Positions 571 to 60,668 of a DNA stretch of 64,000 bases are shown in pieces. Position 1 is the first letter of the stretch, and every line of letters begins with the position of its first letter. The stretch covers positions 97,477 through 161,476 of the forward strand of contig NIVC01000584.1 in NCBI GenBank assembly GCA_002269645.1, in the 5' to 3' direction. Under the pieces are notes generated by a model, which saw nothing but the letters and a program-made list of their open reading frames with translations, was not told the DNA's origin and ran no database searches. This stretch comes from Macrostomum lignano. Taxonomy: Eukaryota. Position numbers and translations under genes: made by a program.

Positions 571-1149
571 ATAGCAAATCTAATCTTCTCTCACACCTTT
601 CTTTTCTTACTCTTTGCCTTAGAAACATCAGAAAAACTTGCAAACATTGACTTGTGAGCTCCCATTAGGGACAGAAAAGTTTCTTGTGTTTAATGGAGGC
701 CATTTTAATTCAAAGCCACAAAAAGCTGCTTAATATTCAGTATTTTCCTACTTGCCTTGAGAGAGCCTACATTCTTATCACATAGATGTTTTGGTGGCAC
801 AACCTTACTATTAACTAATAGTTATTATTTAGCAGCTTAGACATGAAACCAAAACTTCCTACTTGTTGGTTAGCTGCTGCAAAGTTAGTAATTGCTAACT
901 ACTAACTTAGCATTGCCTCATAAAATTTTTCCTAGAGGGAATACACATATGCACATATACTTGTGCATCTATAGTCAAGATCATATAATGTATACACTAG
1001 AAGTTACTGAAAAATATTTTCAATTGTGCACCAAGTATACTAGACAAAATACACTAGTATATGAATGTACAAGCTATGCTAGCAGTGAGTTTGAAATCTC
1101 CTAGCTCTAACTTACTCTAGCATTGACACAAATGTTTATATAAATTATA

Positions 1150-2508: not shown

Positions 2509-3308
2509 TATATTAAAATTATAATATTTTTATACAGCTTTATATAGCTCTTTTTTATCCTTTATATATTTATAATATATTTGCAAAACAATTGGTAAAA
2601 TACATATTTAAAACTTCATAATATAAACTTTCCTATTTTATAAACATTAATTTTTTATAATTTTAAATATGATTTATTGATTTTTTCTTTTTGAGTTTAT
2701 ACAAATAGTGTTTAATCAATCTGGTAACAGTCAAAATAGCAACAGTCAATCTGGCAACAAGGTCTAGTAAGAGGCTATACATATATATATATCAATTGGC
2801 TATTGGCAGTTAAACATTAGAAAGCTTTGATTGTTATAATTACTAATAATTGTTATTATTGTTTTTTATTATTAATACTTAATACTATTTATTTTTATAA
2901 TAGAGTATACAAAAATAGTTTTAAGGATTAAAAATTGGAATAGGATTAGATTAGAAAACTATGGGTTGGTTCAAAATGCATAGTTTATAACGTGTTTTCT
3001 TATAATGATATTGCTTTAAAAATGGCAAACTATATTAGATTGATGCATTCTTTATTATTTTTACTAGATGCCATATATAAGTTTTATAATCAAATACATT
3101 ATTATATTAAAATGTTTGATAAAACTTTAAATTATGTTAGAAATGTAGACTTTATATACCATTTTTATTAGAAAAGATATTAGCCATCTTAAAATGAATT
3201 ATTTATATATAAAATTTAAAATTGTATTCATATAAAGTTTGGTTTGTATTTGAAATATATAAAATCTATAATGCAAAATCACATCATCATTCATCACATC
3301 ATCATCAC

Positions 3309-15100: not shown

Positions 15101-18100
15101 AGAGCCACCATGTCAAACATTAAAAAGCCACCATGTCAAACATTTAAGAGCCACCATCTCAAACATATATGTGACTGTTTGTCAAACTTTAAAGAGCCAC
15201 TATTTCGAACATTAAATAGCCACTTTGTCAAACATTAGAGAGCCGCTGTGTCAAACATAAAAGAGCCACCAGGTTAAACATTAAAGAGCCACCATGTCAA
15301 ACATAGAAGAGCCACCATGTAAAACATAAAAGAGCCACCATGTCAGACATTAAAAGCCACCGTGTCAAACATAAAAGGGCCACCAGGTTAAACATTAATG
15401 AGCCACCATGTCAAACAATAAAGAGCCACCATGTTGAACATAAAAGAGCTACCATGTCAAACATTTAAGAGCTACCATGTCAAACATTTAAGAGCTACCA
15501 TGTCAAACATTTAAGAGCTACCATGTCAAACATAAAAGAGCCACCATGTCAAACATAAAAGAGTGACCATGTCAAACAATTAAAAGCCACTTTGTCTAAC
15601 ATTAAAGAGCCACCATTTCAATCATAAAAGAGCCACCATGTCAAACATAAAAGAGCCACCATGTCAAACAATAAAAAGCCACTTTGTCTAACATTAAAGA
15701 GCCACCATGTCAAACATTAAAAAGCCACCATGTCAAACATAAAAGAGCCATCATATCAAACATTAAAGAGCCACTTTGTCTAACATAAAAGAGCCACCAT
15801 GTCAAACATAAAAAAGCCACCATTTCAAACATTAAAAAGCCACCATGTCAAACATAAAAGAGCCACCATGTCAAACATAAAAGAGCCACCATGTCAAACA
15901 TAGAAGAGCCACCATGTCAGATATTGAAAAGCCACTGTATCAAACATAAAAGAGCCACCATGTCAACATAAATGAGCCACCATGTCAACATAAAAGAGCC
16001 ACCATGTCAAACAATAAAGAGCCACCATGTCAAACATAAAAGATACACAATTTCAAACGTAAAAGTAAGCGAATTTTAAAGGAGCCACTATAATGCTAAG
16101 GAAATTGTCGCACTAGCTATTTATTGTCTGGTGGATGCTTGCTATTTGGGGATGCTATCTATCTGGGGGATGCTTGCTATCTGGGGGATGCTTGCTATCT
16201 GGGGGAAGCTTGCTATCTTGGGGATGCTTGCTATCTGGGGGATGCTTACTATCTGGGGTCTGGGGGAATGCTTGCTATCTGGGGGATGCTTGCTATCTGG
16301 GGGATGCTTGCGATCTGGGAGATGCTTGCTATCTAGGGGATGCTTGCTATCTGGGGGATGCTTGCTATCTGGGGGATGCTTGCTATCCGGGGGATGCTTG
16401 CAATCTGGGGGATGCTTGCTATCTGGGGGATGCTTGCTGTCTTGGGATGATTTCTTTTTGCATTGCACTTCATTTAAGTATTTTGTCTTTTTTCTTTGTG
16501 ATTGTGAATGCTTTATTTGGCTATCTTTTTGTTACTTGTAGAGAGCAGAGATTCTATACAAATATTCTATAATGGGGGGCGAAGATTGCTAGTATATTGA
16601 CTAATACCATGACATTATTTTGGAATAATTAATAATATATATAATTGTTTTTTTCAATATTGCCAATTTCGACTACATTGTACCCTAAAGAAGCTATACA
16701 TAGATAGCCATTTAATAGCAACAAAGATAAATATGAGTTTAAAGACCTATATAAATACTTTGTAGATCCAAATAAATATTAAGATTTAAGAAAAAATTTA
16801 TAAGATAACAAATGAAAAGTAGCATTGTCCTACTAAGAAGGGTCATTAGCTATACTTATACAGGCTGACTTTGCCTTGTCTTTTTGTTGAATATTTTACT
16901 TTTTTATGTTTATAACAAACTGGATTAGTGGCATAAAGTAGGGAAGGCAAGAGGCCAATATATGCAAGGCTAGGCAAGAGGCCAGGAATGCAAAGACCAT
17001 ATATAAATACTGCATATAAGTGGAGTGAGAGCAGAAGGGGAGAGGCTAGGTGGGGCTAAGCCATGCAAGACTGTAGGGGGCAAAACAGCCATAGAGAAAG
17101 AAAGGGGAAGGCTTGCCAATTAAAGGCATTTGCAGCAAGAGACCTGATTAGATTAGTCCAAAAAGAAAGAAACAAAAAAGATGCTAGTCAATGAAAATGA
17201 AAACAAAAAAAATATCTTTGTTATTTGAGTCTATAACCCAAGATATTTAAAAAGATTCCCTTTTAAAGTGGCAATATTTATTTTTAGTGATCTATCTTTC
17301 TGCCCTTATCCATGAAATAAAGGGCTCCAATGGTCTTTAAGTCTTAGTTATTAAGTAGATGACAATGATTGAGTACATTGCACTATGGCAATTAAAATAA
17401 GTGTTTGAATATATGCCATTAGGGTCCACTCTTTAGAAACTTAGTTCTAGTTCTCTCAAAAAAACTGAGCTTATTCTTATCCAAGCTTTAAAAATAGGCA
17501 CTCAGTTTGAGTGAGTTTATCATTTGCAAAAACTTATAGACTTAGTCAATCGTCCATCAGGCTGCTATTGTCACAAATGCCTAGGTGTATAGACTTTTCC
17601 ATTTTGCTGATATTAGTTGCCCACCTATCTACTTACTATTTTATCTTGCTGATATCATGGGCTTATGGTTGCCATGAGCAATGCAAAGTTGACTAGGTGG
17701 ATATTTGCCACTTTGTTTCATAGAGCTTCAAAGTTTATAAAGTTACACCTCAGTCCTTCAGTGAACTGCACCCCTCCAGCCCTTCAGTGAACTGCACCCC
17801 TCCAGCCCTTCAGTGAACTGCACCCCTCCAGCTCTTCAGTGAACTGCACCCAACAGTCCTTCAGTAAACTGCACCCCTCCAGCCCCTCAGTGAACTGCAC
17901 CCCTCCAGCCCTTCAGTGAACTGCACCCCTCCAGCTCTTCAGTGAACTGCACCCAACAGTCCTTCAGTAAACTGCACCCCTCCAGCCCTTCAGTAAACTG
18001 CACCCCTCCAGCCCTTCAGTGAACTGCACCCCTCCAGCCCTTCAGTGAACTGCACCCCTCCAGCCCTTCAGTGAACTGCACCCCTCCAGCTCTTCAGTGA

Positions 18101-21100
18101 ACTGCACCCAACAGTCCTTCAGTAAACTGCACCCCTCCAGCCCTTCAGTGAACTGCACCCCTCCAATCCTTCAGTGAACTGCACCCAACAGTCCTTCAGT
18201 AAACTGCACCCCTCCAGCCCTTCAGTGAACTGCACCCCTCCAATCCTTCAGTGAACTGCACCCCTTTAGTCCTTCAGTGAACTGCACCCCTCCAGCTCTT
18301 CAGTGAACTGCACCCAACAGTCCTTCAGTAAACTGCACCCCTCCAGCCCTTCAGTGAACTGCACCCCTCCAATCCTTCAGTGAACTGCACCCCTTTAGTC
18401 CTTCAGTGAACTGCACCCCTTCACTGTAGCAAGCTTATTTAACCTTTGTGACCCAAAATTCTACAGCTTGATGTTAATATTAAAAGGTCTTTAATCCTGA
18501 ATCCTCACACAGTGATCGCTCTGGCCGGCTTAGCATCCGTCCTGGACTCGGATTATCTCCGGGCTGCGTGCGCCAATCTCGTGTCTGTGCTCATGGCTTA
18601 TTATTCCTATCGTAGCAGCTGTGAGCTGGTTCGGGCGGCCGGTGCGGCGGCCTTGCTGAGCTCGCCCGATCCGCCTGGCGACAGGCACAGCGGTGGCGGA
18701 ACCCTCGGCCTGGTGCTGTACTGCAACAGTCAGCTGCTCACCGCACTGCTGCTCTCCCGCTGCCTGCTTGCCGACTTGCCCAACCGACTGCAGCGGCTAC
18801 TTCGAGTAGTCATGTTCGCCTTTCTGCAGCTGCCGCTCATATTCACCTGTGTGGGCGCTCCCGACCCCCTGCTGAGCCGCAGCCCCATGCTGTCTGTGTG
18901 CCCAGCTGCCTGCCTCATCAATGCCCAATTGTTGGGCAACGCTGACCGGCTGGTTGGCCAGAGTGTGCGAGCTGTGCGAAATCTGTGCAGGCAGGCTCGC
19001 GCTCTGGGCCTTGAGGTTTGTTGCTGAGCGGCTGCAGTGCCGCGTTTGTTGGGTTCGGGAAAGGTTCAGCAAGAGTCGATTTGTGTAGCTTTATTTGTCT
19101 GTCTGTCTGTCTTAATTTCTTAATGTCTGTCCCTGTCTGTCGGTCGGTAAATCTGTGTCTGTTTGTTTGTCTGTCTTTCTGTTTGTCCATCTGTCTGACT
19201 GTCTGTTTGTCCGTCTGTTTGTTTGTCCATCTGTCTGTCTGTCAGTCTCTTTGTCCATCTGTCTGTTAGTCTGTTTGTCCATCTGTCTGTCTGTATGTCC
19301 GTGTCTGTTTACTTGATGTCTGTCTTCTGTCTGTCTATGTAGTCTTTCTGTCTCCTACGAGGAACTCGAAATCCCGAGACCCGAGTCGATATTTGAGATT
19401 GAGACCATTACTCGTATTTGCACCTGTCGAGTTGTTATTTGTTTGTTTGACTGTCCGTGTAGCGTAGGCCCGTGTTCGCATCCGGGTCAGTGGAATGGCC
19501 ATGGTTGATTGTGAATTCGCTAATTGCAGATAAAAATAATATTTGCATCGAATATTTTGCGTAGACCTACTTATTAGTAAGTAGTCTGTATCGTTTCTGA
19601 CGCTTTTCATTTGATTTTGTCTGTCCAACAGGGCGTCATCGAGCAGCACTGGGCCCGGCTGCGAGTTCCTCTGCTGCTTCGCGTATTCTGGCTATTGAAA
19701 GCCGCCTATTACCTGGTTACTATGCTGTTGCTACCCGCTGAGGCTGGCGGCGGCGAGTCTCCGACTTTGATTGGCGCCCTGCAGGCGGCCACGCTGGGCC
19801 GCGGCTCGGAGAACCTGCTGTCCCTGCTGGGCATGACGGCCGTCATCAGCTGGCTGTCGCAGCTCATTGTGCTCTGCTTCGCCAAGTTTATCAGCCTTCA
19901 CGACTACGAGGAGTGGCAGTACGGCACCGTGTCGGCCATGCTGTTCTTCCTGCTGGCTCTGCAGGCTGGCATCACCGGCTTGCCGGCCGACGACAGAGTG
20001 AGCCGGCTGTACCGCAATCTGTGCCTGATGGTGTCCGCTCTGTTGCACTTTGTGCACAATATGTGCCAGCAGGTCTGTGTCCGTGCCTTGTTCTGTGTGC
20101 TTTCCGAATGCTTTTAATCAGTAGGAGCCAAATTGGAAGGCTTGGGGATTATGTTGAAATAGTGGGGTGTTAACTTAGATTGCATTAGGTGCTAAAATAG
20201 AATGCATTAGTGCCAAATTAGAATGTATTAGGTGCCAAATAAAAAAGCATTAGATGCCAATTAAGAATATATTAGGTGCCAAATTAGAATGCATTAGGTG
20301 CCAAATAAGAATATATTAGGTGCCAAATTAGAATGCATTAGGTGCTAAATTAGTATGCATTAAGTGCTAAATTAGAAAAACCCATTAGGTACCAAATAAG
20401 AATATATTAGGTGCTAAATTAGAATGCATTAGGTGCTAAATTAGAATGCATTAGGTGCTAAATTAGAAAAACCCATTAGGTAACAAATTAGGTGCCAAAT
20501 AAAAAGCATTAGATGCCAAATAAGAATATATTAGGCGCTAAATCAAAATGCATTACGGGCCAAATAAGAATTCATTAGGTGCCAACTTAGAATGCATTAG
20601 GGGCCAACTTAGAATGCATTACGTGCCAACTTAGAATGCATTAGGGGCCAAATAAGAATGCATTAGTTGCCAACTTAGAATGCATTAGGTGCCAACTTAG
20701 AATGCATTAGGGGCCAAATAAGAATGCATTAGGTGCCAACTTAGAATGCATTAGGTGCCAACTTAGAATGCATTAGGGGCCAAATAAGAATTCATTAGGT
20801 GCCAACTTAGAATGCATTAGGGGCCAAATAAGAATGCATTAGGTGCCAACTTAGAATGCATTAGGTGCCAACTTAGAATGTATTAGGTGCCAAATAAAAA
20901 AGCATTAGATGCCAAATAAGAATATACGAGTATTAGGCGCTAAATCAAAATGCATTAGGGGCCAAATAAGAATGCATTAGGTGCCAACTTATAATGCATT
21001 AGGGGCCAAATAAGAATGCATTAGCTGCCAACTTAGAATGCATTAGGTGCCAACTTAAAATGCATTAGGTGCCAACTTAGAATGCATTAGGTGCCAACTT

Positions 21101-23222
21101 AGAATGCATTAGGGGCCAACTTAGAATGCATTACGTGCCAACTTAGAATGCATTAGGGGCCAAATAAGAATGCATTAGTTGCCAACTTAGAATGCATTAG
21201 GTGCCAACTTAGAATGCATTAGGTGCCAACTTAGAATGCATTAGGGGCCAAATAAGAATGCATTAGGTGCCAACTTAGAATGCATTAGGTGCCAACTTAG
21301 AATGCATTAGGGGCCAAATAAGAATTCATTAGGTGCCAACTTAGAATGCATTAGGGGCCAAATAAGAATGCATTAGGTGCCAACTTAGAATGCATTAGGT
21401 GCCAACTTAGAATGCATTAGGGGCCAAATAAGAATTCATTAGGTGCCAACTTAGAATGCATTAGGGGCCAAATACGAGCTAAGAATGCATTAGGTGCCAA
21501 CTTGGAATGCATTAGGTGCCAACTTAGAATGCATTAGGTGCCAACTTAGAATGTATTAGGTGCCAAATAAAAAAGCATTAGATGCCAAATAAGAATATAC
21601 GAGTATTAGGCGCTAAATCAAAATGCATTAGGGGCCAAATAAGAATGCATTAGGTGCCAACTTATAATGCATTAGGGGCCAAATAAGAATACATTAGGGG
21701 CCAAATAAGAATGCATTAGTTGCCAACTTAGAATGCATTAGGTGCCAACTTAGAATGCATTAGGTGCCAACTTAGAATGCATTAGGGGCCAAATAAGAAT
21801 GCATTAGGTGCCAACTTAGAATGCATTAGGGGCCAAATAAGAATTCATTAGGTGCCAACTTAGAATGCATTAGGTGCCAACTTAGAATGCATTAGGTGCC
21901 AACTTAGAATGCATTAGGTGCCAACTTATAATGCATTAGGGGCCAAATAAGAATGCATTAGGTGCCAACTTAGAATGCATTAGGTGCCAACTTATAATGC
22001 ATTAGGGGCCAAATAAGAATGCATTAGGTGCCAACTTAGAATGCATTAGGTGCCAACTTAGAATGCATTAGGTGCCAACTTAGAATGCATTAGGGGCCAA
22101 ATAAGAATGCATTAGGTGCCAACTTAGAATGCATTAGGTGCCAACTTAGAATGCATTAGGTGCCAACTTAGAATGCATTAGGTGCCAACTTATAATGCAT
22201 TAGGGGCCAAATAAGAATGCATTAGGTGCCAACTTAGAATGCATTAGGTGCCAACTTATAATGCATTAGGGGCCAAATAAGAATGCATTAGGTGCCAACT
22301 TAGATAAATGCATTGTTAGGTGCCAAATTAATATAAAGGCATTATGTGCTAAATTAGATGAATGCATTAGGTGCCAAATTGAAAAAATGCATTAAGAGCC
22401 AATCCTCGAGTGTAAAGTTATATAAGTAAATATACGAGAACCCCCGGTTTTACCACAATCGCCAACCCCAGGTGATGCAGCGAGTCGCCTCAGCCCCCGC
22501 CGGTGTCCCGCTCAGCGTGCACCTTCGCGTCCTCTCCCTGTGCCTGTTCCTCCTGCTGAGTCCCATGGCCTTCCTGTACGTGCTGTGGACCAGCTACGAG
22601 GCGGGGGCCTGGATCCTCGCCGTCACCGCCTTCTCCGTGGAGGTGCTGTTCAAAGTGCTCTTCACCCTCCTGCTGTACGCCGCATCCATGCTGGAGGCCT
22701 GGCGGGAGGGCACCTTCGAGGATTTGGACGAGACTCTGTACTACATCCGCGGCGCCAGCAATGTCGTGGAGTTCGTGTTCGGCATCTTCCTGTTCTTCAA
22801 CGGCGGCTACATCTTCATATTCGAGTCTGGAGGCATTATCCGCGGCGTGATGCTGCTCATTCACGCCTACTTCAATATTTGGCAGCAGGCCGCTAATGGC
22901 TTGCAGGTGAGGCTTGGCTGGTAGCTGAGGACACGGATGTTCTACTGACGGAAATTCCAGAATTGCTGGCAGTGTTTTAGCTGCTTTTAAATTCAACGTT
23001 AGAAGTATAGTGTTGAACAGCATTATGTAAACAGACAAACAGACACCGACAGAGCCATATTCACACCAACATAGACGGACAACAGGCAATAAAACAGGCA
23101 TTTTTAGATTTAGAGGCTGACAGACAGAAAAACAGACTAACAGACCGACAGACAGATAGAAAGAAGGCACTAAGACAGACAGACAGACAGACAAACAAAC
23201 AAAGAGACACAGTCAGACAGAC

Positions 23223-23281
<59 letters not shown>

Positions 23282-23314
23282 AAGAGACACAGACAGACAG
23301 ACAAACAAAGAGAC

Positions 23315-23353
<39 letters not shown>

Positions 23354-23360
23354 AAGAGAC

Positions 23361-23421
<61 letters not shown>

Positions 23422-23796
23422 TACAGATAGACAGATACAGTCAGACAGACAGACAGACACAGTCAGACAGACAAGCACAGACACACAGACAGATACAGAT
23501 AGACAGACAGACAGACACAGTCAGACAGACAGACAGACAGCTGTCCCTGCCCTCTCCGGTGTCCGCAGGCGCTCCGAAACCGGTGGCTGTCGCTGGCCCG
23601 GCTGCACAGCTTGTCCCCGGCCAGCGAGGAGCTGCTGCAGTCCATGGGCGACGTGTGCGCCATCTGCTACAGCGACCTGCAGCACCGTGACTGCCGGGTG
23701 ACGCCCTGCCGCCATGTGTTCCACTCCGCCTGCATTCGCCGCTGGATCGCCGTCAGCATGGACTGTCCGATGTGCCACCAGGCCATGTTCACCTGA
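8528..23796 (+). CDS. RNF139/TRC8- or RNF145-like multi-pass ER membrane RING-H2 E3 ubiquitin ligase, ~651 aa
   Basis: Exons 8528-8876, 18513-19015, 19632-20072, 22472-22906, 23569-23796, all GT-AG with compatible phases (total 1956 nt). TRC8_N motifs [30 protein letters not shown] and [21 protein letters not shown]; C-terminal RING CAICY...[13 protein letters not shown]...CPMCH. Cannot separate RNF139 from RNF145 by eye. Confidence 0.85.
9149..10985. repeat. Dispersed/tandem ~150-bp repeat with internal hairpin; copies ~9149-9310, ~10645-10882 and inverted 10909-10985
   Basis: Shared ggatcctatatatccacttcggtttacgatcatttaaat...taaatgat.gtgaaccgaagctagccatgtat.gagatag. Confidence 0.8.
9720..10240. 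repeat. 178-bp tandem repeat, ~3 copies
   Basis: Unit starts at 9720, 9898 and 10076. Confidence 0.9.
11543..12076. mobile_element. MITE, 534 bp, ~24-bp TIRs, apparent ATA TSD
   Basis: tagtccactttggcgacaaac at the left and gtttgttgccaaagtggactg at the right, both flanked by ATA; subterminal repeats inverted. Confidence 0.7.
12430..12680. repeat. CT-rich low-complexity tract
   Basis: Near-pure pyrimidine tract; produces spurious Ser/Leu/Phe ORFs. Confidence 0.85.
12746..13000 (+). mobile_element. 5' end of a non-autonomous Helitron-like element
   Basis: A|TCCTATATACTAAAAATGAG-TTGTCTGTATGTATG...AAATGGCTCAACCGATTTTCTTCAAACTTG, typical of Helitron-N 5' ends. 3' end not identified. Confidence 0.5.
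13330..16050. repeat. 2.7-kb 22-24-bp minisatellite (aaagagccaccatgtcaaacatt) with higher-order blocks
   Basis: Direct reading; a variant block atatgtgactttatgtcaaacttt...aatagccactttg recurs. Confidence 0.95.
16130..16445. repeat. 18-bp minisatellite (gggggatgcttgctatct)
   Basis: Tandem units. Confidence 0.95.
17750..18425. repeat. 26-bp minisatellite (ccttcagtgaactgcacccctccagc)
   Basis: Tandem units ending ~90 bp before the exon 2 acceptor. Confidence 0.95.
19090..19345. repeat. Degenerate (CTGT)n microsatellite, intronic
   Basis: Direct reading. Confidence 0.9.
20180..22400. repeat. 22-bp minisatellite (aggtgccaacttagaatgcatt), intronic
   Basis: Tandem units filling most of intron 3 of the E3 ligase gene. 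Confidence 0.95.
23030..23540. repeat. (ACAG)n microsatellite, intronic
   Basis: Direct reading. Confidence 0.95.
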
Positions 23797-24480: not shown

Positions 24481-24929
24481 CTGAAAATTGATAAAGTATT
24501 GGTAGCTACAGATGTGTACTATGTTCATATTAATTCTGACTCGTACTTCCGATTAGTTGTGATATTTAGCTTCCCAAATTCTGCGCTGAACCAAAAATGC
24601 CTAGTTCAGGATTTCATTATTGCCGAAATTTGGTTAATTCCATTTAATAATTTTATATATCGGATTATCTAACTCTAAGTGCGTTTTTTATTTGCTACTT
24701 GTGCCTGCGGACCCAGATTCGATTCTAGTTCTAGCAGTGCGCTGCACACGTATGCTGGAGGAACATTGCATATATTGCTGTGAACTTGCTGAATACAATG
24801 CGTCTTTTGATAAGTTCACTACACCGCTCACTGAGTGTGAATTTTTGCAGCTGCTTCATTTCCTGTTGTTCTTTCTGCTGTCAATAGCTAGTCCTGCTTT
24901 TCTACTTGGATATTTCTTGCGGCTTTGAT

Positions 24930-25213
24930 GTCCGTCTGTCTGCCTGTGTGTCTGTCTGTCTGTCTGCCTGTGTGTCTGTCTGTCTGTCTGCCTGTCTGTC
25001 TGTCTGCCTGTCTGTCTGCCCGTCTGTCTGCCTGTCTGTGTGTCTGTCTGTCTGTCTGCCCATCTGTTTGTCTGTCTGTCTGCCTGTCTGTCTGCCCGTC
25101 TGTCTGTCTGTCTGTCTGCCTGTCTGTCTGCCCGTCTGTCTGTCTGTCTGTCTGTCTGCCTGTCTGTCTGCCTGTCTGTCTGCCCGTCTGTCTGTCCGTC
25201 TGTCCGTCTGTCT

Positions 25214-25265
<52 letters not shown>
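24930..25265. repeat. (CTGT)n microsatellite
   Basis: Direct reading. Confidence 0.95.
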
Positions 25266-25266
<1 letters not shown>

Positions 25267-25383
25267 GGCTGTCTAATAACTTTATAAAATTCAGTTTAGT
25301 ACGGTCTCGTACGTTTTTCTGTTCTAATAATTATTTTGTTTTCTTCTGACCCTGCTTCTAAAAGCAGCAGCAGCAGCAGCAGC

Positions 25384-28300
25384 ATGACTTCCCTGCTGGC
25401 AACGCAGCTCAACAAGCTGCGCCTGCCCGAAGGCCAGACAGCCAGCGCAGACTACAGGAGACGCAAATCACTGATTCATTCGGCAACAGAATTAAATAAA
25501 ATCGATGCCGCTGCCCACCTGGAAAGAGGTAGGTGCGATTGAGTATAGAAATGCGACGGTGAAGAATTGCTCGCTCTAGAGCGTTATGGACATTCAAGCA
25601 TACAAACCTTAGAGATTTAGTATATTTAGATGGTATCCAAGTGAATCAGATAAAAATTCCGGCAGATATCTTAGTGGAAGAAGTATGGAAGGAATTATCT
25701 GGGTGGTAGAATTTATGGCGAATCGGCATCATGTCAGATCGAAATCATGCCAGATGGACATCATTCCAGGTAGACATAATTCCAAATGGAAATCATGCCA
25801 GATGGACATCATTCCAGGTAGACATAATTCCAAATGGAAATCATGCCAGATAGACATCATTCCAGGTAGACATAATTCCAAATGGAAATCATGCCTGATG
25901 GACATCATTCCAGATGGACATCATTCCAGATGGACATCATTCCAAATAGAAATCGTGCTAGATAGAAAAATCATTTTCGATAAAAATGATGCCAGATGGA
26001 AGTCATGCCAGATGGCTCATGCAGATAAAACTTCAGCTTCTCATTCCTGATTGAATTCCAGCTCAGAAGGCATTTCAACACCTGCTGAATGTGGACCCGA
26101 GCTTGCAAGAGTTTCAAGACTGCTTCTTCTCCGAGGAGCGACTGAACTTCGAGCCGTCAATGCAGACCCCCAGCAGCAAGGCAGCTCTGGATCAAATTAT
26201 CGAGCACTTTTATCTGCGCGTTTCCCAGCATCTTCTGCTCGGCATCACCCTGGATGCGCTGGAGTGGCTGGTTTATCGGTTCCAAACGCATCAGTACAAC
26301 ATGGAGGCCATGCTGCAGGCCGTGTTGCCTTATCACAGCACCAACCTGTTTCCCAAGTAGGCTGCTGCTGTCTGGGCTTGGCTGAGGACACTGGGGCGGC
26401 CCTGTCTGCGACACGCAGTGGGAGAAGCCGGACCCCAGCCCAAAAAAACAGGGGGGGGGGAGCCGGACCCCAGCCCAAAAAAACAGGGGGGGGGGAGCCG
26501 GACCCCAGCCCAAAGACACAGTGGGGGGGGGCTGGACCCCAGCCCAAAAAAACAGGGGGGGGGGGGAGCCGGACCCCAGCCCAAAGACACAGTGGTGGAA
26601 GCCGGACCCCAGCCCAAAGACACAGTGGGGGGGAAGCCGGACCCCAGCCCAAAGACACAGTGGGGGGGGGGCTGGACCCCAGCCCAAAGACACATTGTGG
26701 GAGGCCGGACCCCAGCCCAAAGACACATTGAGGGAGGCCGGACCCCAGCCCAAAGACACATTGAGGGAGGCCGGACCCCAGCCCAAAGACACATTGAGGG
26801 AGGCCGGACCCCAGCCCAAAGACACAGTGGGCGGAGGCTGGACCCCAGCCCAAAGACACAGTGGTGGAAGCCGGACCCCAGCCCAAAGACACAGTGGGCG
26901 GAGGCTGGACCCCAGCCCAAAGACACATTGTGGGAGGCCGGACCCCAGCCCAAAGACACATTGAGGGAGGCCGGACCCCAGCCCAAAGACACAGTGGGGG
27001 GGGGAGGCTGGACCCCAGCCCAAAGACACATTGTGGGAGGCCGGACCCCAGCCCAAAGACACAGTGGGGGGGGGAGGCCGGACCCCAGCCCAAAGACACA
27101 TTGAGGGAGGCCGGACCCCAGCCCAAAGACACAGTGGGCGGAGGCTGGACCCCAGCCCAAAGACACAGTGGTGGAAGCCGGACCCCAGCCCAAAGATACA
27201 GTGGGCGGAGGCTGGACCCCAGCCTAAAGACACAGTGGGCGGAGGCTGGACCCCAGCCCAAAGACACAGTGGTGGAAGCCGGACCCCAGCCCAAAGACAC
27301 AGTGGTGGAAGCCGGACCCCAGCCCAAAGACACAGTGGTGGAAGCCGGACCCCAGCCCAAAGACACAGTGGTGGAAGCCGGACCCCAGCCCAAAGACACA
27401 GTGGGGGGGAAGCCGGACCCCAGCCCAAAGACACAGTGGGGGGGGGGGGCTGGACCCCAGCCCAAAGACACATTGTGGGAGGCCGGACCCCAGCCCAAAG
27501 ACACATTGAGGGAGGCCGGACCCCAGCCCAAAGACACATTGAGGGAGGCCGGACCCCAGCCCAAAGACACATTGAGGGAGGCCGGACCCCAGCCCAAAGA
27601 CACAGTGGGCGGAGGCTGGACCCCAGCCCAAAGACACAGTGGTGGAAGCCGGACCCCAGCCCAAAGACACAGTGGGCGGAGGCTGGACCCCAGCCCAAAG
27701 ACACATTGTGGGAGGCCGGACCCCAGCCCAAAGACACAGTGGGCGGAGGCTGGACCCCAGCCCAAAGACACAGTGGTGGAAGCCGGACCCCAGCCCAAAG
27801 ACACAGTGGTGGAAGCCGGACCCCAGCCCAAAGATACAGTGGGCGGAGGCTGGACCCCAGCCTAAAGACACAGTGGGCGGAGGCTGGACCCCAGCCCAAA
27901 GACACAGTGGTGGAAGCCGGACCCCAGCCCAAAGACACAGTGGTGGAAGCCGGACCCCAGCCCAAAGACACAGTGGTGGAAGCCGGACCCCAGCCCAAAG
28001 ACACAGTGGTGGAAGCCGGACCCCAGCCCAAAGACACAGTGGGGGGGAGGCTGGACCCCAGCCCAAAAACACATTGAGGGAGGCCGGACCCCAGCCCAAA
28101 GACACAGTGGGCGGAGGCTGGACCCCAGCCCAAAGACACATTGAGGGAGGCCGGACCCCGGCCCAAGGCACAGTGGTGGAAGACGGACCCCAGCCCAAAG
28201 ACACATTGAGGGAGGCCGGACCCCAGCCCAAATACACAGTGGGGGGAGGCTGGACCCCAGCCCAAAGACACATTGAGGGAGGCCGGACCCCAGCCCAAGG

Positions 28301-33900: not shown

Positions 33901-33937
<37 letters not shown>

Positions 33938-34032
33938 CCATAATTCTCACCATCTTCATCACCACCATTATCATCATCATCATCATCATCATCATCATCT
34001 TCATCACCACCATTATCATCATCATCATCATC

Positions 34033-34081
<49 letters not shown>

Positions 34082-34293
34082 CCATAATTCTCACCATCTT
34101 CATCACCACCATTATCATCATCATCATCATCATCATCACCATAATTCTCACCATCTTCATCACCACCATTATCATCATCATCACCATAATTCTCACCATC
34201 TTCATCACCACCATTATCATCATCATCATCATCATCATCACCATAATTCTCACCATCTTCATCACCACCATTATCATCATCATCATCATCATC

Positions 34294-34378
<85 letters not shown>

Positions 34379-34473
34379 CCATAATTCTCACCATCTTCAT
34401 CACCACCATTATCATCATCATCATCATCATCATCATCATCTTCATCACCACCATTATCATCATCATCATCATC

Positions 34474-34525
<52 letters not shown>

Positions 34526-49022: not shown

Positions 49023-49914
49023 TGCAAGTGCCACAGAAAGCTAAATTTAGAATCACTGCTCAGGAGAGCAGCCACGCCAAATTATTTCAGATTGCCACTA
49101 GGAGCGAGTTGCTAATCAATTGACATCCATTGTCAGATTGATACGAGGGCAGGGATTGACTCAAATAGCTCGTAACCTCAACCTCTGGGGCACTGGAATA
49201 TTACTATTTTTGCATTTACATGTACATACATGCTTTAACTTTTAGCTTTAGTGTTTGGCGTGATCGTTCACGGGACACGTTCGACTGTCTGTCTGTCTGT
49301 ACATGTGCGAGTATTCAGCTTGAACGGTCCGCCAGTCCCACCCCAGAAAGTTAAGCATAGTTGGACGCGGTTCACCAAACGCATATGTAAACTAAGCTGA
49401 GACTGAGAGCCTGAGTTCCAATTCACAAAAGACAGAGAAGCCGAATCTGGACGATTGCCTGAGCAGTGAGTACACCAGGAAGTGAGTTGATGTGAGCGAG
49501 TCCTTAAGTGCGAACTCCCACATGTATAGAGATCAAATGAGCTGAAGCAATTAAAACTTCCCAATACGTCCACAAATTCTACGAACCAGAAATTGCCAAT
49601 CGGCAAATTGCACAGCGCTTTCATCTTGAGAGATGTAGCCAGTTTGCAAAGAGGCTGGCCAATCAGCTGCTCAAGTTTATTGAAGAAAACTTTGGAAAAA
49701 TGAGATAGAAAACTGGCAAAATGCCGCGCCGAGAAAAACTAGAAGCAGAAAAAGTTTTGAGCACTCGGAAAACGACAAAAAAAACAAAAAATGGTAACAG
49801 AAAATTAACAAAAACATGGGAAATGCCTCTGCAGCTGAACTCTCTGAACAGTCTGTCTTAATGACTTTTTACTGTATCGGGTGCCTGATTTTAGTGTCCT
49901 TATCTGTTATAGGG

Positions 49915-50523: not shown

Positions 50524-55018
<4,495 letters not shown>

Positions 55019-57866
55019 TGCTACTGGAACTGAATGGTTTGGCCTAGTGATGTAAATTGGGACTAATCTGGTTGCTTAGATAGTAGTACATCTATGGTTA
55101 TAAACATAGCAGAGCCTGGTTTGTTATTCCGCACTGCAAATTATTAATGATTAAATACAAATTAACCAATCAACTGAATAGAATAAAAATTCATAGCAGA
55201 CTTTTCTAAATATAAAAAATATTGTGACTAATCTTAAAAAATATATTATGAATTTAAATATAGGCTACTAATTGATCATTTTCTTCAAAAAAACTTTTTT
55301 GTTTTATTTTCCACATGCCTTTGTTTTATTATTTATAAAAACCACAGTCAATGGTTAAAATTATATTGAATGGCTAAAAAGCAACTTATTGATATAAAAA
55401 GCACTTTACCAAAACACTGCATACTCACCCTAGAATCAATACATCTTGTCAAACAAATTCTTACTTAAGATATGTTGGAGTATTTACTAGTCTATAGGCC
55501 TAACATTTGCCTACCAATGTAAATAAAAAAGAAAAATCACTGATAAATAATTATGTAGCTTTTATTTGGTATGCTAACTTTAATATCTTGTTTTCTAATA
55601 ATGATGGAATAGGTTTGAAACTAATAAATGGTAACTTTTTACTAATAATTGCAAATTAAAAATCAATGTTGAAAAGCACATATTCAAATTCAAATGTTAC
55701 AAATTCTATTGCAATTTAGTTTTAATTAAGTTAGAGGCAATTAGTAAATGAATTATTATTGCAAAAATTATTGCAAGAATTAAATTAAGTGCAAATTTAG
55801 CTAAAACCTATAATTCACACTTATATGGCATGGGGGCCTATGCTTAAATTGTAATTCAAAATTACTCGTAGAAATAGAAAATTAAAATTAGAAAATTAGA
55901 AGAGTCAAAATAATGATTTAGTTTAGCTAAATAAAGTAGAAAAGTTTTTGTTAAGTACAAAATAACATTGAGGTGGCCCACGAGGATTTCTAAAACTCCA
56001 TATTTAAAATACGAAGCCACTAGACTTATTAGCCTATAGTTTGCTAACTGTCAAATCATTAATCAATCACACAATACAAGTACAACTGACCAAAAAAGGT
56101 TAGTACATGAACCAATTATTGACTCTTTGATAGCCTAAAAAGGATTAGCAGAGTAGAGTGTAAATTAATATGAATTCACAAATCAGGGAATCACGGGAAT
56201 CACTACGCGGCATCAAAGCTTTCGATGTGCATTCGACAAGCTCTTTTTAAAAGTATACTCGTCATACTACTCTGGCCAAAGTACAAAAGTATGTTTAACA
56301 AAAATGTATCACTATGATGATAATTTTTTGATTTTTTCAGCAATTCAAATTTTTATTTTTTAATTTCAATTTCTTTCTCAGCTTTTTATATAGTATGGCT
56401 AGCGATTCCCAGTAGCTAAGCTTTATCGTAATGCTGATTGAGAATTTTCTAGTAGCTAATGTGCCAACTTGCAGCCTCTCTTCCGCGTCTCCGCTAGTCC
56501 TCTGGAGCCCAGCTTAAATTAATTAGTCCCGACGAGACTCTCGACTGCCTAGTGAATAAATGCCTGTCGCAGTTGCACAGTCAATCTTACGTTTCGTCTT
56601 ATCACCTTGGGCCTACACATGTGTGGGGGATCCAGAATATCATTTACTGGAGATTGATTTCAGATTTTAGCGGGATTTCTAGCGGTACTAAAATAATCTT
56701 CATAATTTAATTTAAAACGATCATTTCGGGCCATTTTTACCGCTTCGATCAATTCATAAATGTCCCACCAAGAGCAGTCCATCAGTGGGATAGATGCTAG
56801 GGACTCCGTAGCCATGGCGGATCCAGGGATAGCATATTTTTGCAACTTTTCTGGTCCAATTGATTAATTACTCGTATAATTTAATTGAATATGTACGTGA
56901 ATGCAGGCAAAAAATTTCCTACGTCCGAGATATATGTAAAAGAAGCAGTGTGTTGCGAGCGTGCAGTACAGTGTATTTGTCAAAATGGAGCAAAGAATGC
57001 AGCCACACAAGAGCGCAATTGTTGCAATCGGCAATTACATGTAGTTTGCTTTAATTAAAGCAGTCGGCTAATCTATACATGCATGCACTGTACATGTAAG
57101 CTACAATAGGCTTTCATCTGTGGGAATCAAGACGTGTTTGAGGTGTTTCTCAGCACAGCGACACGAGCATAGCTACTCTTCCAAGCAGGTAAACAGCCTA
57201 TTTAGAAGCTGCCAGCAGTTGAAGTAAGTTACGTTTTTTGACACTCGAACAGCTGTTTGAGTTCCCGGCCTCAGTAACTAACGTCTGCTGCATGCTCCGA
57301 TTGATAGCTACTTATTATATAGGCGTACTGCTTCTTTATTTGCTGAAGCTTGCGACACAAAAGCAACGCTGCTTCCCATGACACAATTGCCCTCTGTCGG
57401 AGCTCTATCCAAGTATCTCCATGCATGCGCAGTGCTTTGCCCAAATGGCTTTTAGGCTCGCTTCTGTTAGCAAACATCAATCAAGCTGTACTCTATAGCA
57501 ACCATGAAAGCACTTGAAAGCTGCTATATTACAAAGCTTTGCTTGACTGCTTCAGCTAACTTTCTTTCTTGGAGCTCTGCCACTCGTAATCCTCACTTCG
57601 GCAGCATCAGAAAGGTGAGAGAAACTTCCAGGATGTGGGCGCCAGCATTTTGCCTGCCCATTAGGCCGGGGTCTTGGGCCACTGTCTACTGCCATAAAAT
57701 TCTTATTTGCATGCATTGATTGAATTAAGCACTTTTAAAGGTTATTAATTAAGGAAAAGACATTTGGATCAACCTTTTCTCTTCTTTATACAGAATTCAC
57801 CATTTGAACAGTTGAGCCAAAGCTAATAGCTGACTGCAAACCAAAGAAGTGTGTGCGCACGAGCAG

Positions 57867-60668
57867 ATGGCAAAAACAGCCGCCCTATCGGGCTCCCTGC
57901 TGATGCTCGCTGCAGTGCAGCATCTTGCCGCTGCATCAGAAGCTGCAGCTAGAGAAAGAAACTGGTGGCCCAGCAGTGAGAGCCTCTCTGACTACGAAGC
58001 TGCCCGTCTGATCAACATGGAGTCTCTGGCAGACTGCTTGGCCGCTGCCAGCAGCGACTCCGCTGTGCAGCTGGTGGCGTTCAGCGCCAGCTCCGGCCTG
58101 TGCGCTCACTTCAGGTGCCGTCTGGGCCTGAGCCACTGCAGGAAGTGCCGCAATGCGAACAAGGGAGCTCAGCCAGTGTGGGTGAGTCTTGAGTCAGTCT
58201 GGCAATTCGAACAGATGAAAGAATGCGAAGGGCTGTCCTTGGCTCTCTTTAGGATGAGGAGGGGTAGTAGTTAGAGCTTCGGACTCACGACTGGAAGGTC
58301 GGGGTTCGATTCTCAACTCCCTTGGAATAATTTGTGTCCTTGAGCAAGACACTTAACTCTGCATTGCTTCAGTTAACCCAGCTGTAAAATGGGTGCCCAG
58401 CATTAGCTGGGGTTAATTAAGGGTGTGCGGCGACCCCCAGTCCTTGGACTGAACAGCCGTACGCAGCAATAGCTGCGGCCGAATTGTCGGTTGCACACCT
58501 GGCCATTAGAGCAGGTGTAATCAATTATTTTTTCAACTGCAGTGCGATCATATTCCACGAAGTACTCATTCCAACGCATTTAGTCACCTGCTCACGCTTA
58601 ACCTTCTAGACAGCCAGCAGTGACTGCTGGACCACCGTGCAGCACAGGGTGTCCGGTTCAGTGGACTTTGACCGCAACTGGACTCAGTACCAGAGCGAGT
58701 TCGGCGAGGGACCCGACGGAAACTACTGGATCGGTGAGTGATGTTCATTTTTGGGCAGATTTCGCTTTAAAATGCACTGGTGAGATATGAATCATCAGCT
58801 TTGAGCAAAGTGCCAAATTGTAAGAAGATCACAGCTACTTGCAGTTCTTTTCATTATGAATTTTTTTCTTCTACAGAAATCCTTGCAGAAAGCAATTTTA
58901 CTTGTTTCCCGTCTCAGCTGAACATTTTTTGAAAATTTAAGCTGCAAATTAACATGCAGCTGCTGAATTTCCAAGGCTGAAAGAAGAGTGGGCGCCCCTG
59001 TTTCTTGGTGGGCACCCCTGTCTCATGGTTTGCGCCCCTGTCTCATAATTGTCGCCCCTGTCTCATGGTTTGCGCCCCTGTCTCATGATTGTCGCCCCTG
59101 TCTCATGGTTTGCGCCCCTGTCTCATTGTTGGCGCCCCTGTCTCTGTCGCGACTTTCCTAGTCATTTCTTAGTTCACCTTCACTTGTCTCTGTTTACTCT
59201 GTTTTCTCTCTCTCTCTCTGTCTAGCTCAATCTTGTTATTCTTATCTCTCTCTCCCTTGCTGCGTTCTGATTGGCTCTCCGTTCTCGCCTCTTTCCTCAG
59301 TCGCGCACTCCACCCCCTCTCTTTATTATCTGCAATTTAAACCCCCTAAGTTAATGTCTGGTATAAATATACTTGTTTGGGCCCTGCGCCCACTTACTGG
59401 CTTATCTTAGATTCAATTTAACTCTAATTTAAATATATCATAATTCAATCGTTAGTATTTTCTCTACAGTCTCATTTTTGGCGCCCCTGTCTCATGGTTT
59501 GCGCCCCTGTCTCATTTTTAGCGCCCCTGTCTCATTTTTAGCGCCCCTGTCTCATTTTTAGCGCCCCTGTCTCATTTTTAGCGCCCCTGTCTCATGGTTT
59601 GCGCCCCTGTCTCATGGTTTGCGCCCCTGTCTCATGGTTGGCGCTCCTGTTTCATGGTTGGCGCCCCTGTCTCATGGTTGGCGCTCCTGTTTCATGGTTG
59701 GCGCCCCTGTTTCATGGTTTGCGCCCCTGTCTTATGGTTGGCGCCCCTGTTTCATGGTTAATTGCGCCCCTGTGTCATGGTTAGCGCCCCTACCCCCTCT
59801 CTCGGAAGCCGGTGGATGTCACGTCAAAGAGGATAAGAAACTTGAGCTCCTGTCGAGTTCGCTCTCTCATCACTTTCATTGAGTTACATGTATTATGAAA
59901 TTACGAGCTAAAATTCAGTTTTCATAGTCCAGATCGTATATAGCAGCTCTTACTTGTGCAGACTGTTGAGTAGGCAAACAATCTTCACAAACTTCACAAA
60001 CAATCGAATATTAATTCTCTACTCACGCACTACTCATAATGGCTCATATTAAAAAGCTGTAAATGCATCGTATACACTACTAAAAGTAACGAGAATAGTT
60101 TTAAAGTTTGTCACGATGCGTCGGACGCGAGAATGACAAAACCGCATTTTTGGTAAACGGCTCATATTGTTTGAATCCGTAACTTTGTACAGAATTTCCA
60201 TGACAAACTGAATTTCAAGCTGATGCAATACTTTTAAAACCTTTAGGCCTCAACGCACTGAATGAACTCACTTTTCCTGTAAACCGGAAGCTGAGGATCC
60301 TGATGAAAACTTGGAACGACTCGGTGAGCTGGGCTGAGTACTCCAGCTTCTCGGTCGGTTCCGAGTCCGACCACTACCGGCTGAGCGTGTCCGGCTTCTC
60401 TGGCAGCGCTGGAATCGGCGACTCGCTGACCCGGAATTCCGGGCTCAGGTTCAGCGCGAGGGACGCGGATCGGAACGTCTATGTCCACAACTGCGCGGCC
60501 CAGTTCCATGGAGCCTGGTGGTATTCGAACTGCTCGCATACCTGTCCGAACGGAGTGTTCCGGCAATTCCCTGGAGCTGTAGAGATCCCCTTCTGTCAGG
60601 GCATCATCTGGAGGTTCCCGTACGGCTCGCATTACTCTTTGAAGGAGTTTGAAATGCTCGTTCTGTGA
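57867..60668 (+). CDS. Secreted fibrinogen-related protein (signal peptide + PAN/apple-like segment + fibrinogen C-terminal domain), ~286 aa
   Basis: Exons 57867-58181, 58610-58733, 60247-60668 (861 nt, phases 0 and 1 consistent). Motifs [26 protein letters not shown]...[26 protein letters not shown] and [15 protein letters not shown]. Confidence 0.88.
58252..58530 (+). mobile_element. tRNA-derived SINE with CORE-like central domain, in intron 1 of the fibrinogen-related gene
   Basis: A-box-like gggtagtagttagagc, B-box ggttcgattc, then tgtgtccttgagcaagacacttaactc...cagctgtaaaatgggt (58333-58395). Confidence 0.7.
58990..59790. repeat. 20-bp minisatellite (gcgcccctgtctcatggttt) interrupted by a solo LTR
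   Basis: Tandem units on both sides of 59145-59468. Confidence 0.9.
59145..59468. mobile_element. Solo LTR, 324 bp
   Basis: Starts TGT and ends ACA; perfect 5-bp TSD GTCTC (59140-59144 and 59469-59473); internal TATAAATA and CCAAT-like motifs. Confidence 0.8.

What the first reader, a model, noticed from the sequence alone, without database searches (positions are those of the whole stretch)
20925..21605. Minos-type transposon excision footprints (TA-CGAG-TA, TA-CTCG-TA, TA-CGAGC-TA) recorded in a minisatellite and across the window
Seen: inside the 22-bp satellite the ancestral unit aagaatata|ttaggcgc (20521-20538) becomes aagaata-TACGAGTA-ttaggcgc (20925-20932, copied to 21598-21605 by array duplication). 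Separately, ccaaata|agaatg becomes ccaaa-TACGAGCTA-agaatg (21473-21481). Both are a duplicated TA plus 4-5 foreign bases. The same words occur at 19409 (TACTCGTA), 55863 (TACTCGTA), 56869 (TACTCGTA), 59902 (TACGAGCTA) and 49166 (TAGCTCGTA); 25300 (TA-CGGTCTCG-TA) and 47653 (TA-CTCGG-TA) are related. Established: Drosophila hydei Minos has termini beginning CGAGC and leaves TAcgagTA / TActcgTA footprints, whereas most Tc1/mariners leave 2-3 nt. Inference: an endogenous Minos-like element has excised many times from this genome. No full element is present here, and the isolated 8-mers alone could be chance; the in-array insertions are the strong evidence.
Basis: partly seen in the sequence, partly recalled or inferred. 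Interest (0 to 1): 0.72.

Follow-up and report, generated by a model that had tools for sequence, protein, structure and literature searches.

The report
Transposon excision scars in a flatworm
Small TA-flanked CGAG or CGAGC insertions in an intronic minisatellite and in nearby unique DNA of the flatworm Macrostomum lignano are best read as scars left when a cut-and-paste transposon with Minos-like ends jumped out. The mechanism is well known; here the transposon itself is not seen.

Summary
The window is Macrostomum lignano (assembly Mlig_3_7, contig NIVC01000584.1). A 22-bp minisatellite in an intron of a TRC8-like gene has exactly two odd units. One is 28 bp (TA-CGAG-TA, later copied once inside the array). 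The other is 29 bp (TA-CGAGC-TA). Each is a TA duplication plus 4-5 foreign bases, and many empty sister units exist.

Five more such words lie in unique DNA, against about 0.4 expected; 0 of 3000 local shuffles reached 5.

I confirmed that Minos ends are TA|CGAGCC. Five further elements whose transposases are 50-60% identical to Minos also have CGAGCC ends. Three relatives at 37-41% identity have CAAC or CAAA ends. The letters therefore point to the Minos clade.

Limits:
- No such element or transposase remnant lies in the window or in about 45 kb of extra M. lignano DNA.
- The three testable isolated words are identical in all three duplicated genome copies, so no empty or filled allele was found.
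- The 5-base form is not the canonical Minos scar.
- TACGAGTA also arises by a point change in another satellite.

Verdict: real, old excision footprints of a TA-targeting transposon, probably Minos-like. This is a known kind of thing and of modest interest.

The parts
20172..22380 (.). 22-bp minisatellite (consensus CATTAGGTGCCAACTTAGAATG), about 100 units, in the intron between two exons of a TRC8/RNF139-like gene. It acts as the 'recorder' that supplies empty sister sites.
   Evidence: TRF, unit listing, flanking exons matched to TRC8_N profile positions 207-352 and 364-493.
20925..20932 (+). Footprint 1: TA-CGAG-TA, a 6-bp net insertion at a TA of the unit ...AAGAATA|TATTAGGCGC.
   Evidence: 28-bp unit among 22-bp units, wraparound alignment, sequence.
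21598..21605 (+). Copy of footprint 1, made by a later duplication inside the array (673 bp away, identical neighbouring units).
21473..21481 (+). Footprint 2: TA-CGAGC-TA, a 7-bp net insertion at a different TA of the unit (GGGGCCAAA|TA|AGAATG). An independent event.
   Evidence: 29-bp unit. About 20 empty copies of the same unit exist in the array.
20485..20550 (+). Empty paralogous copy of the three-unit block that carries footprint 1 (AAGAATATATTAGGCGC at 20522-20538). A second, older empty copy lies at 20226-20291.
19409..19416 (+). Isolated TA-CTCG-TA in the preceding intron of the same gene. It is the right edge of a 61-bp TA-CGAG...CTCG-TA stretch (19356-19416) that is very rich in CGAG/CTCG. 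This may be a complex footprint with filler DNA.
   Evidence: There are 6 CGAG/CTCG in 80 bp against 0.36 expected, the densest such cluster in the window.
49142..49174 (+). TA-CGAG-(21 bp)-GCTCG-TA. It contains the word TAGCTCGTA at 49166-49174. It is either a simple 5-base footprint next to a chance TACGAG, or one complex footprint with filler.
55863..55870 (+). Isolated TA-CTCG-TA in AT-rich intergenic DNA, upstream of the RPA1-like gene.
   Evidence: Identical in both other genome copies, L012 and L013.
56869..56876 (+). Isolated TA-CTCG-TA.
   Evidence: Identical in L012 and L013.
59902..59910 (+). Isolated TA-CGAGC-TA, about 400 bp upstream of a fibrinogen-domain exon.
   Evidence: Identical in L012 and L013.

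Best explanation
These are old germline excision footprints of a TA-targeting cut-and-paste DNA transposon of the Tc1/mariner superfamily whose ends begin 5'-CGAGC. The source is most likely a member of the Minos clade of Tc1.

Proposed mechanism:
1. The element inserts at a TA and duplicates it. This step is inferred.
2. The transposase cuts the transferred strand at the element-flank junction and the other strand about 4 nt inside the element. Each flank is left with a TA plus a 3' overhang CGAG. This step is established for Minos, not shown here.
3. The two overhangs pair at their outer C:G and G:C positions with two central mismatches. Host end-joining and mismatch repair then give TA-CGAG-TA or TA-CTCG-TA.

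The sequence shows these points directly:
- A TA is duplicated around 4-5 foreign bases.
- Empty sister sites exist.
- Both orientations occur.
- One scar was later duplicated with its array segment.
- Three scars predate the recent genome duplication.

The 5-base form (CGAGC) needs an extra step, such as a cut 5 nt inside the element with loss of the other overhang, or 1 nt of copying from a filled sister chromatid. That step is not explained. The source element is not in the roughly 110 kb of this genome that I could read.
For: Anatomy of the two array insertions and their empty sister units.

The two insertions sit at different TA positions yet share the same core. For the second event, given the first, this has a chance probability of about 1e-3 (my estimate).

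Enrichment of the array-defined words in independent non-array DNA: 5 vs 0.39 expected, and 0 of 3000 block shuffles reach 5. Two more words lie in about 20 kb of extra M. lignano sequence.

Minos ends are TA|CGAGCCCC (PMC3680223), and Minos leaves a six-bp footprint (PMC3386967).

CGAGCC ends in five further elements with transposases 50-60% identical to Minos:
- L001
- L002
- L008, Haematobia irritans, and L009/L010
- L014/L015

Three relatives at 37-41% identity have TA|CAACCCC or TA|CAAAAC ends. The fifth base, C, of the 5-base scars matches the fifth base of all six Minos-clade ends.

The genome does host TA-inserting Tc1-like elements: a degenerate copy with TA duplication lies at 1146-2512.
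Against: - No element with TA|CGAG...CTCG|TA ends was found.
- No Minos-group transposase remnant was found, using tblastn with 120 proteins and a profile HMM, in the window or in L012/L013.
- For the five isolated words no empty site exists. The three that could be compared are identical in all three duplicated copies. No TA/CGAG indel distinguishes the copies.
- Taken alone, neither word passes a correction for all TA-N4/5-TA words.
- TACGAGTA is also generated by a simple T>C change in a 19-bp satellite and then amplified, so the bare word is not diagnostic.
- Three of the seven events have 5 foreign bases, which the canonical Minos model does not give.
- The clade assignment rests on 4-5 nucleotides. 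I did not survey the ends of other TA-targeting families (pogo, mariner, Stowaway-like MITEs).
Confidence: 0.62

Rival explanations
1. These are footprints of a TA-targeting transposon with CGAG ends that is not a Minos relative. Candidates are another Tc1/mariner or pogo lineage, or a non-autonomous MITE family that happens to share the first 4-5 terminal bases.
For: The same anatomy and enrichment as for the best explanation. Only 4-5 letters tie the scars to Minos. The one Tc1-like element actually present (1146-2512) is unrelated to Minos. The 5-base scars do not fit the canonical Minos product.
Against: Among the Tc1 relatives sampled, CGAGCC ends were found only in the Minos clade. A 4-base scar is what Minos gives, whereas Tc1/Tc3 and Sleeping Beauty or mariner leave 2-3 bases (own knowledge; the SB footprint is given in PMC2874221).
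Confidence: 0.2
2. These are ordinary small insertions and chance words. End-joining or replication errors happened to add similar bases twice in one array. The isolated 8- and 9-mers are chance or arose by point mutation.
For: The bare word can arise by point mutation (TATGAGTA to TACGAGTA in the 19-bp satellite). Other foreign insertions occur in arrays (GGCC at 5759; AATT in L012). Single-word enrichment does not survive Bonferroni correction. No empty alleles exist for the isolated words.
Against: Two independent insertions at different TA sites each duplicate TA and share CGAG. No CGAG template exists in the array consensus. Five array-defined words occur in unique DNA against 0.39 expected, and 0 of 3000 shuffles reach that number.
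Confidence: 0.12
3. The scars come from the laboratory Minos vector. The group that made this assembly injected Minos plasmids with or without transposase mRNA into M. lignano. Mate-pair libraries of the resulting HUB1 line were used in the assembly.
For: PMC5730564 describes the Minos::pEFA::eGFP injections and lists HUB1 mate-pair libraries.
Against: Three of the words are identical in three copies that are 1-5% diverged. One scar was duplicated within a diverged array. The paper states that integration in HUB1 was not transposase-mediated. Seven insert-and-excise cycles within 64 kb in one line are not credible.
Confidence: 0.01
4. Assembly or polishing artefact in a repetitive PacBio-based assembly.
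For: The arrays are hard to assemble, and the array scars could not be checked in another copy.
Against: Long-read errors are mostly single-base and not sequence-specific. The isolated words were assembled identically three times on different contigs.
Confidence: 0.03

Closest known systems
Minos (Drosophila hydei Tc1-like element) and its excision footprint
   Same: Both have a TA target duplication, foreign bases CGAG or CTCG, and a 6-bp net scar. The element ends are TA|CGAGCC. The fifth base C matches the 5-base scars. Minos is reported to insert mostly into introns (PMC2874221), as for the array scars here.
   Different: No element, inverted repeat or transposase was found in this genome region. 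The host is a flatworm, not a fly. Three of seven scars carry 5 bases, which is not the canonical product. These events are ancient and fixed, not experimental.
Tc1/Tc3 (C. elegans) and Sleeping Beauty footprints
   Same: The logic is the same: a TA duplication enclosing the terminal bases left by a staggered cut and end-joining. The SB scar TAG(T/A)CTA is given in PMC2874221.
   Different: Those elements begin with CAG and leave 2-3 bases. The letters and the length here do not match them.
Minos-clade elements found here in other organisms (L008 Haematobia irritans, L009/L010, L014/L015, L001, L002)
   Same: All have TA|CGAGCC ends, which are the letters seen in the scars.
   Different: They are intact or nearly intact elements of 1.6-1.7 kb with transposase genes. 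Nothing of that kind was found in the M. lignano sequence I could read.
Degenerate Tc1-like element in the window (1146-2512)
   Same: It is a TA-flanked cut-and-paste element with long inverted repeats in the same genome. It has a DD~34E-like spacing and a weak DDE_3 match.
   Different: Its ends read TA|TAGTATTTCCCAG, not CGAG. It has no significant similarity to the Minos transposase. It cannot be the source of the scars.

Membership tests
Tc1/mariner excision footprint | The scar sits at a TA, and the TA is present on both sides of the foreign bases. | tested here: met
   Both array insertions. All five isolated words have this form by construction.
Tc1/mariner excision footprint | An empty version of the same site exists (allele or paralogue). 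| tested here: inconclusive
   Met for the two array events, which have many empty sister units. Not met for the isolated words: there is no in-window paralogue, and 55863, 56869 and 59902 are identical in all three genome copies.
Tc1/mariner excision footprint | The foreign bases equal the terminal bases of an element that lives in the same genome. | tested here: not met
   No TA|CGAG...CTCG|TA element lies in the window or in L012/L013. Only about 110 kb of a 764-Mb assembly could be read, so absence from the genome is not shown.
Tc1/mariner excision footprint | Both strand versions of the scar occur, as expected from repair of a mismatched overhang duplex. | tested here: met
   CGAG at 20925. 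CTCG at 19409, 55863 and 56869.
Minos clade of Tc1 (IR/DR, DD34E) | The element ends begin CGAGCC next to the TA. | tested here: inconclusive
   The trait itself is confirmed in 6 of 6 clade members and is absent in 3 of 3 more distant relatives whose ends could be read. The scars match its first 4-5 bases, but no end sequence is available here.
Minos clade of Tc1 (IR/DR, DD34E) | A canonical scar of four terminal bases plus TA (6 bp net). | tested here: inconclusive
   Four independent events fit: 20925, 19409, 55863 and 56869. Three events (21473, 49166, 59902) have five bases. Literature basis.
Minos clade of Tc1 (IR/DR, DD34E) | A transposase gene or remnant with HTH and DDE_3 domains related to Minos. 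| tested here: not met
   tblastn with 120 Minos-group or Tc1 proteins and a profile HMM against all six-frame ORFs gave a best E of about 1. The same search on L012/L013 found nothing.
Minos clade of Tc1 (IR/DR, DD34E) | Long (about 250 bp) inverted repeats with inner and outer transposase-binding repeats. | tested here: not met
   No such structure with CGAG ends was found.

The most novel reading that the evidence does not exclude
Macrostomum lignano carries, or carried before its recent whole-genome duplication, an endogenous and highly mobile Minos-clade transposon. That clade is otherwise reported from insects and vertebrates (PMC6943129). The element excised so often that scars lie about every 10 kb while few or no copies remain locally. 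A reproducible 5-base scar would point to a cleavage offset or repair route different from Minos. Minisatellites would then serve as natural recorders of transposon passage. It might also bear on why Minos-vector transgenesis behaved oddly in this species.
Probability: 0.3. Interest if true: 0.5.

Novelty: new member of a known kind. Interest (0 to 1): 0.33.

Why it matters
If confirmed genome-wide, this would show three things.
- A Minos-like cut-and-paste transposon was active in the germline of a free-living flatworm.
- This model species repairs such breaks by end-joining that leaves scars.
- Tandem arrays, with their many built-in empty sites, let single excision events be proven from one genome sequence.

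There is a practical side. M. lignano researchers tried the Minos vector and saw integration that was not transposase-mediated (PMC5730564). Knowing whether an endogenous relative, and perhaps a host defence against it, exists is relevant to building transposon tools for this species.

It does not reveal a new mechanism.

Tried and rejected
1. A search for TA-flanked inverted repeats with 16-nt arms and up to 3 mismatches found none with CGAG ends. It did turn up a different Tc1-like element (1146-2512) and inverted arrays at the contig end.
2. Pfam scans of pooled ORFs from AT-rich regions gave nothing. Single fragments gave only a weak DDE_3 hit.
3. The 61-bp and 33-bp TA-CGAG...CTCG-TA stretches are not internally deleted elements. 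Their four inner ends share nothing beyond CGAG, and position 5 disagrees. They are kept only as possible complex scars.
4. In-window paralogues of the isolated words: none.
5. Duplicated genome copies were fetched through the TMEM147 gene. The three reachable words are identical in all copies.
6. The copies of the 22-bp array could not be reached. The TRC8-like gene has no exact entry in the protein collection, and I could not reconstruct its first exon with confidence.
7. I tried to learn whether unnamed NCBI hits were from M. lignano. This was uninformative; they appear to be fish-type Tc1.
8. Laboratory Minos as the source was rejected.
9. Arcà et al. 1997 and two other papers are not held in the library. 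The exact letters of the Minos scar and the heteroduplex model therefore rest on my own knowledge.
10. The right end of L016 (40% identity to Minos) could not be delimited.
Full report
**What the window is.** The window is eukaryotic. It has GC-rich exons and AT-rich introns, and almost every intron is filled with its own minisatellite. A TMEM147 exon (62818-63246, minus strand) is 100% identical to a Macrostomum lignano protein. The locus fetched for that protein matches window 51523-64000 base for base. The window is therefore part of contig NIVC01000584.1 of assembly Mlig_3_7 (GCA_002269645.1) and ends at the contig end. M. lignano is a free-living flatworm and a hidden tetraploid after a recent whole-genome duplication (PMC5704211). 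About 13% of its assembly is tandem repeats and 3% is DNA transposons (PMC5730564).

**The observation.** The 22-bp array at 20172-22380 lies in an intron of a TRC8/RNF139-like E3 ligase gene. The flanking exons match TRC8_N profile positions 207-352 and 364-493. A unit-by-unit listing shows about 100 units of 21-22 bp, plus a few degenerate pieces at the edges. Exactly two kinds of unit carry foreign bases.
- A 28-bp unit, CATTAGATGCCAAATAAGAATA-TACGAG, occurs at 20903 and again at 21576.
- A 29-bp unit, CATTAGGGGCCAAA-TACGAGC-TAAGAATG, occurs at 21459.

The first differs from its empty relatives (20485-20550 and 20226-20291) by 6 bp. The second differs from about 20 empty sister units by 7 bp. 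In both cases a TA of the unit is present on both sides of the added CGAG or CGAGC.

The two events sit at different TA positions of the unit, so one is not a copy of the other. The copy at 21598 shares at least seven identical neighbouring units with 20925, so it was made by a later duplication within the array.

Wraparound alignment of 28 arrays (about 22 kb) shows that all other insertions of 3 bp or more are homopolymer or repeat slippage, except GGCC at 5759. The array consensus contains no CGAG that could have served as a local template.

**Is it more than chance?**
- In the whole window TACGAGTA (both strands) occurs 5 times against 0.49 expected, and TACGAGCTA 3 times against 0.16.
- Tandem arrays inflate word counts, so I removed all arrays (40 kb remain) and shuffled in 1.5-kb blocks, preserving dinucleotides. 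The four word forms occur 5 times against 0.39 expected, and none of 3000 shuffles reached 5. The half-words TACGAG and CTCGTA occur 15 times against 6.2 (P = 0.0013).
- Judged without a prior hypothesis, neither word survives correction for all TA-N4-TA or TA-N5-TA words. The weight comes from using the array insertions to define the words and the unique DNA as an independent test.
- The five isolated words have unrelated flanks and no paralogues in the window.

One caution emerged. In a 19-bp satellite of two related loci, TACGAGTA arises from TATGAGTA by a T>C change with no change in unit length, and is then amplified. The bare word is therefore not diagnostic. Only the length change at a TA is.

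**What the letters point to.** The literature held here confirms two things.
- The Minos inverted repeats are amplified with the single primer TACGAGCCCCAACCACTATTAATTC, so the ends are TA|CGAGCC (PMC3680223).
[quoted passage not shown] 1997).

That the six bases are TA plus CGAG or CTCG, produced through a two-mismatch heteroduplex, is from my own knowledge of Arcà et al. 1997. That paper could not be opened.

I then asked whether CGAG ends are a family trait. A search with the Minos transposase found D. hydei Q24397 and many relatives. I fetched DNA for a sample of them.

| Locus | Identity to Minos transposase | Element ends |
|---|---|---|
| L001 | about 51% | ...CGGGGCTCG followed by T (contig end) |
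| L002 | about 50% | ...GGGCTCG followed by TA |
| L008 (Haematobia irritans) | about 53% | TA, then CGAGCCCTAACCAC...GGGCTCG, then TA |
| L009/L010 | about 60% over the aligned part | TA, then CGAGCCCTAACAAC...GGCTCG, then TA |
| L014/L015 (complete, 1691 bp) | about 51% | TA, then CGAGCCCCAATGC...GGGCTCG, then TA |
| L003 | 40% | TA, then CAACCCCAAATC |
| L004 | 38% | TA, then CAACCCCAATTC |
| L005 | 41% | TA, then CAAAACTCAATTCC |

So CGAGCC is conserved in the Minos clade and differs just outside it. The fifth base, C, is the extra base of the 5-base scars.

**What is missing.**
- No pair of TA-flanked inverted ends beginning CGAG exists in the window.
- tblastn with 120 Minos-group or Tc1 proteins, and a profile HMM built from 25 full-length ones, find nothing better than E of about 1 in any reading frame.
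- The window does hold one degenerate Tc1-like element (1146-2512). It has inverted repeats of about 140 bp, TA on both sides and a weak DDE_3 match. Its ends read TAGTATTTCCCAG, and it is not similar to Minos.
- Two further copies of window 51.6-64 kb exist on other contigs (L012 and L013, 95-99.6% identical). The words at 55863, 56869 and 59902 are identical in all three copies, and no indel among the copies has the TA/CGAG form.
- The extra roughly 45 kb in L012 and L013 contain no Minos-like end or transposase. They do contain two more full words, TACTCGTA and TACGAGTA, 241 bp apart. Both lie inside a 1.7-kb element with terminal inverted repeats that is present in L012 and absent from L013.
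- The copies of the 22-bp array itself could not be reached.

**Mechanism.** The best-supported reading is the standard Tc1/mariner cycle: insertion at a TA with duplication of the TA, then excision with a staggered cut that leaves the first bases of the element on each flank, then end-joining. With 4-base overhangs reading CGAG on both strands, the overhangs pair at the outer C:G and G:C with two inner mismatches. Repair then gives CGAG or CTCG, and both are seen here.

The 5-base CGAGC cannot arise from that pairing in any register. It needs a 5-base retention from one end with loss of the other, or one base of copying from a filled template. It is found three times independently (21473, 49166, 59902), so it looks reproducible, but I cannot explain it.

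Two sites look more complex.
- 19356-19416 is TA-CGAG-(53 bp)-CTCG-TA. It contains the densest CGAG/CTCG cluster in the window: 6 in 80 bp against 0.36 expected.
- 49142-49174 is TA-CGAG-(21 bp)-GCTCG-TA.

Their inner ends do not agree with each other or with CGAGCC, so they are not deleted elements. They may be scars with filler DNA. That is conjecture.

**A confounder considered.** The laboratory that produced this assembly injected Minos plasmids, with or without transposase mRNA, into M. lignano. It also used mate-pair libraries from the resulting HUB1 line. This cannot explain the scars. Three of them are shared by copies that differ by 1-5%, one was duplicated inside a diverged array, and the paper reports that integration was not transposase-mediated.

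**Verdict.** The footprint interpretation is the best explanation (about 0.6, plus about 0.2 for a non-Minos TA-targeting element with the same first bases). Assignment to the Minos clade is reasonable but rests on 4-5 letters. The source element, genome-wide enrichment and empty alleles remain to be shown. Excision footprints are a textbook phenomenon. What is new is a likely Minos-like element in a flatworm, and the neat use of a minisatellite as a record of excision. Interest is modest.

Noticed in passing
window 1146-2512: A degenerate Tc1-like DNA transposon of about 1.37 kb. It has inverted repeats of about 140 bp, TA on both sides, ends reading TAGTATTTCCCAG, several stops and frameshifts, a DD~34E-like spacing and a weak DDE_3 match. 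It is not related to Minos.
   Followed up: partly
window 63391-64000 (contig end): Inverted arrays of a 62-bp unit (ACAAGCTCGAAAAATCATATCGTCGAAAAGTTTAGCAACCACCATC) flank about 180 bp of degenerate TTAGGG repeats. This is a palindromic structure exactly where the contig stops. The same unit reappears in L012 at about 22.0 kb.
   Followed up: no
whole window, e.g. 13324-16065, 26416-29422, 33584-34670: Nearly every intron and intergenic spacer carries its own minisatellite (about 24 kb of 64 kb). Several families recur at another locus (L012), including the 23-bp AAACATTAAAGAGCCACCATGTC, the 18-bp TCTGGGGGATGCTTGCTA and the 30-bp GGAATTGCTGAGATGTCAAGGCTT. They are therefore dispersed repeat families, not local inventions.
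   Followed up: partly
L012 29726-34096 (corresponds to window about 55975-55986): A 4.37-kb insertion is present in one genome copy only. It is flanked by a 12-bp duplication, GGCCCACGAGGA, and ends in an A-rich tail. It is probably a recent LINE-type retrotransposon insertion.
   Followed up: partly
L012 10847-12561 (absent from L013 at about 10320): A 1.7-kb non-coding element with terminal inverted repeats (TAGTGATGGAyCCGAATGT) and a 7-bp duplication, CTCTGAG. It is polymorphic between genome copies, so it is a recently mobile DNA transposon of another superfamily. It contains TACTCGTA and TACGAGTA 241 bp apart.
   Followed up: partly
window 18512-23796 (+): A TRC8/RNF139-like E3 ligase gene with exons at about 18513-19020, 19632-20090, 22472-22900 and a RING exon ending at 23793. 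Its exons have no exact match in the protein collection, so the gene seems to be missing from the public annotation. Its first coding exon could not be located.
   Followed up: partly
window 48908-48989 (-): A tRNA-Ser(GCT) gene, about 150 bp from the 49142-49174 CGAG structure.
   Followed up: no
L012 2049-3713 and L013 1-4115 (19-bp satellite, also window 61615-62738): The variant unit AAGCTGTACGAGTATGACC arose by a T>C change and spread to 3-7 copies per array. It creates TACGAGTA with no insertion.
   Followed up: yes
window 19096-19353, 23119-23540, 24929-25274, 45909-46242: Long (GACA)n/(TGTC)n microsatellites occur in both orientations around the TRC8-like gene and in another intron. 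They dominate the inverted-repeat output.
   Followed up: no
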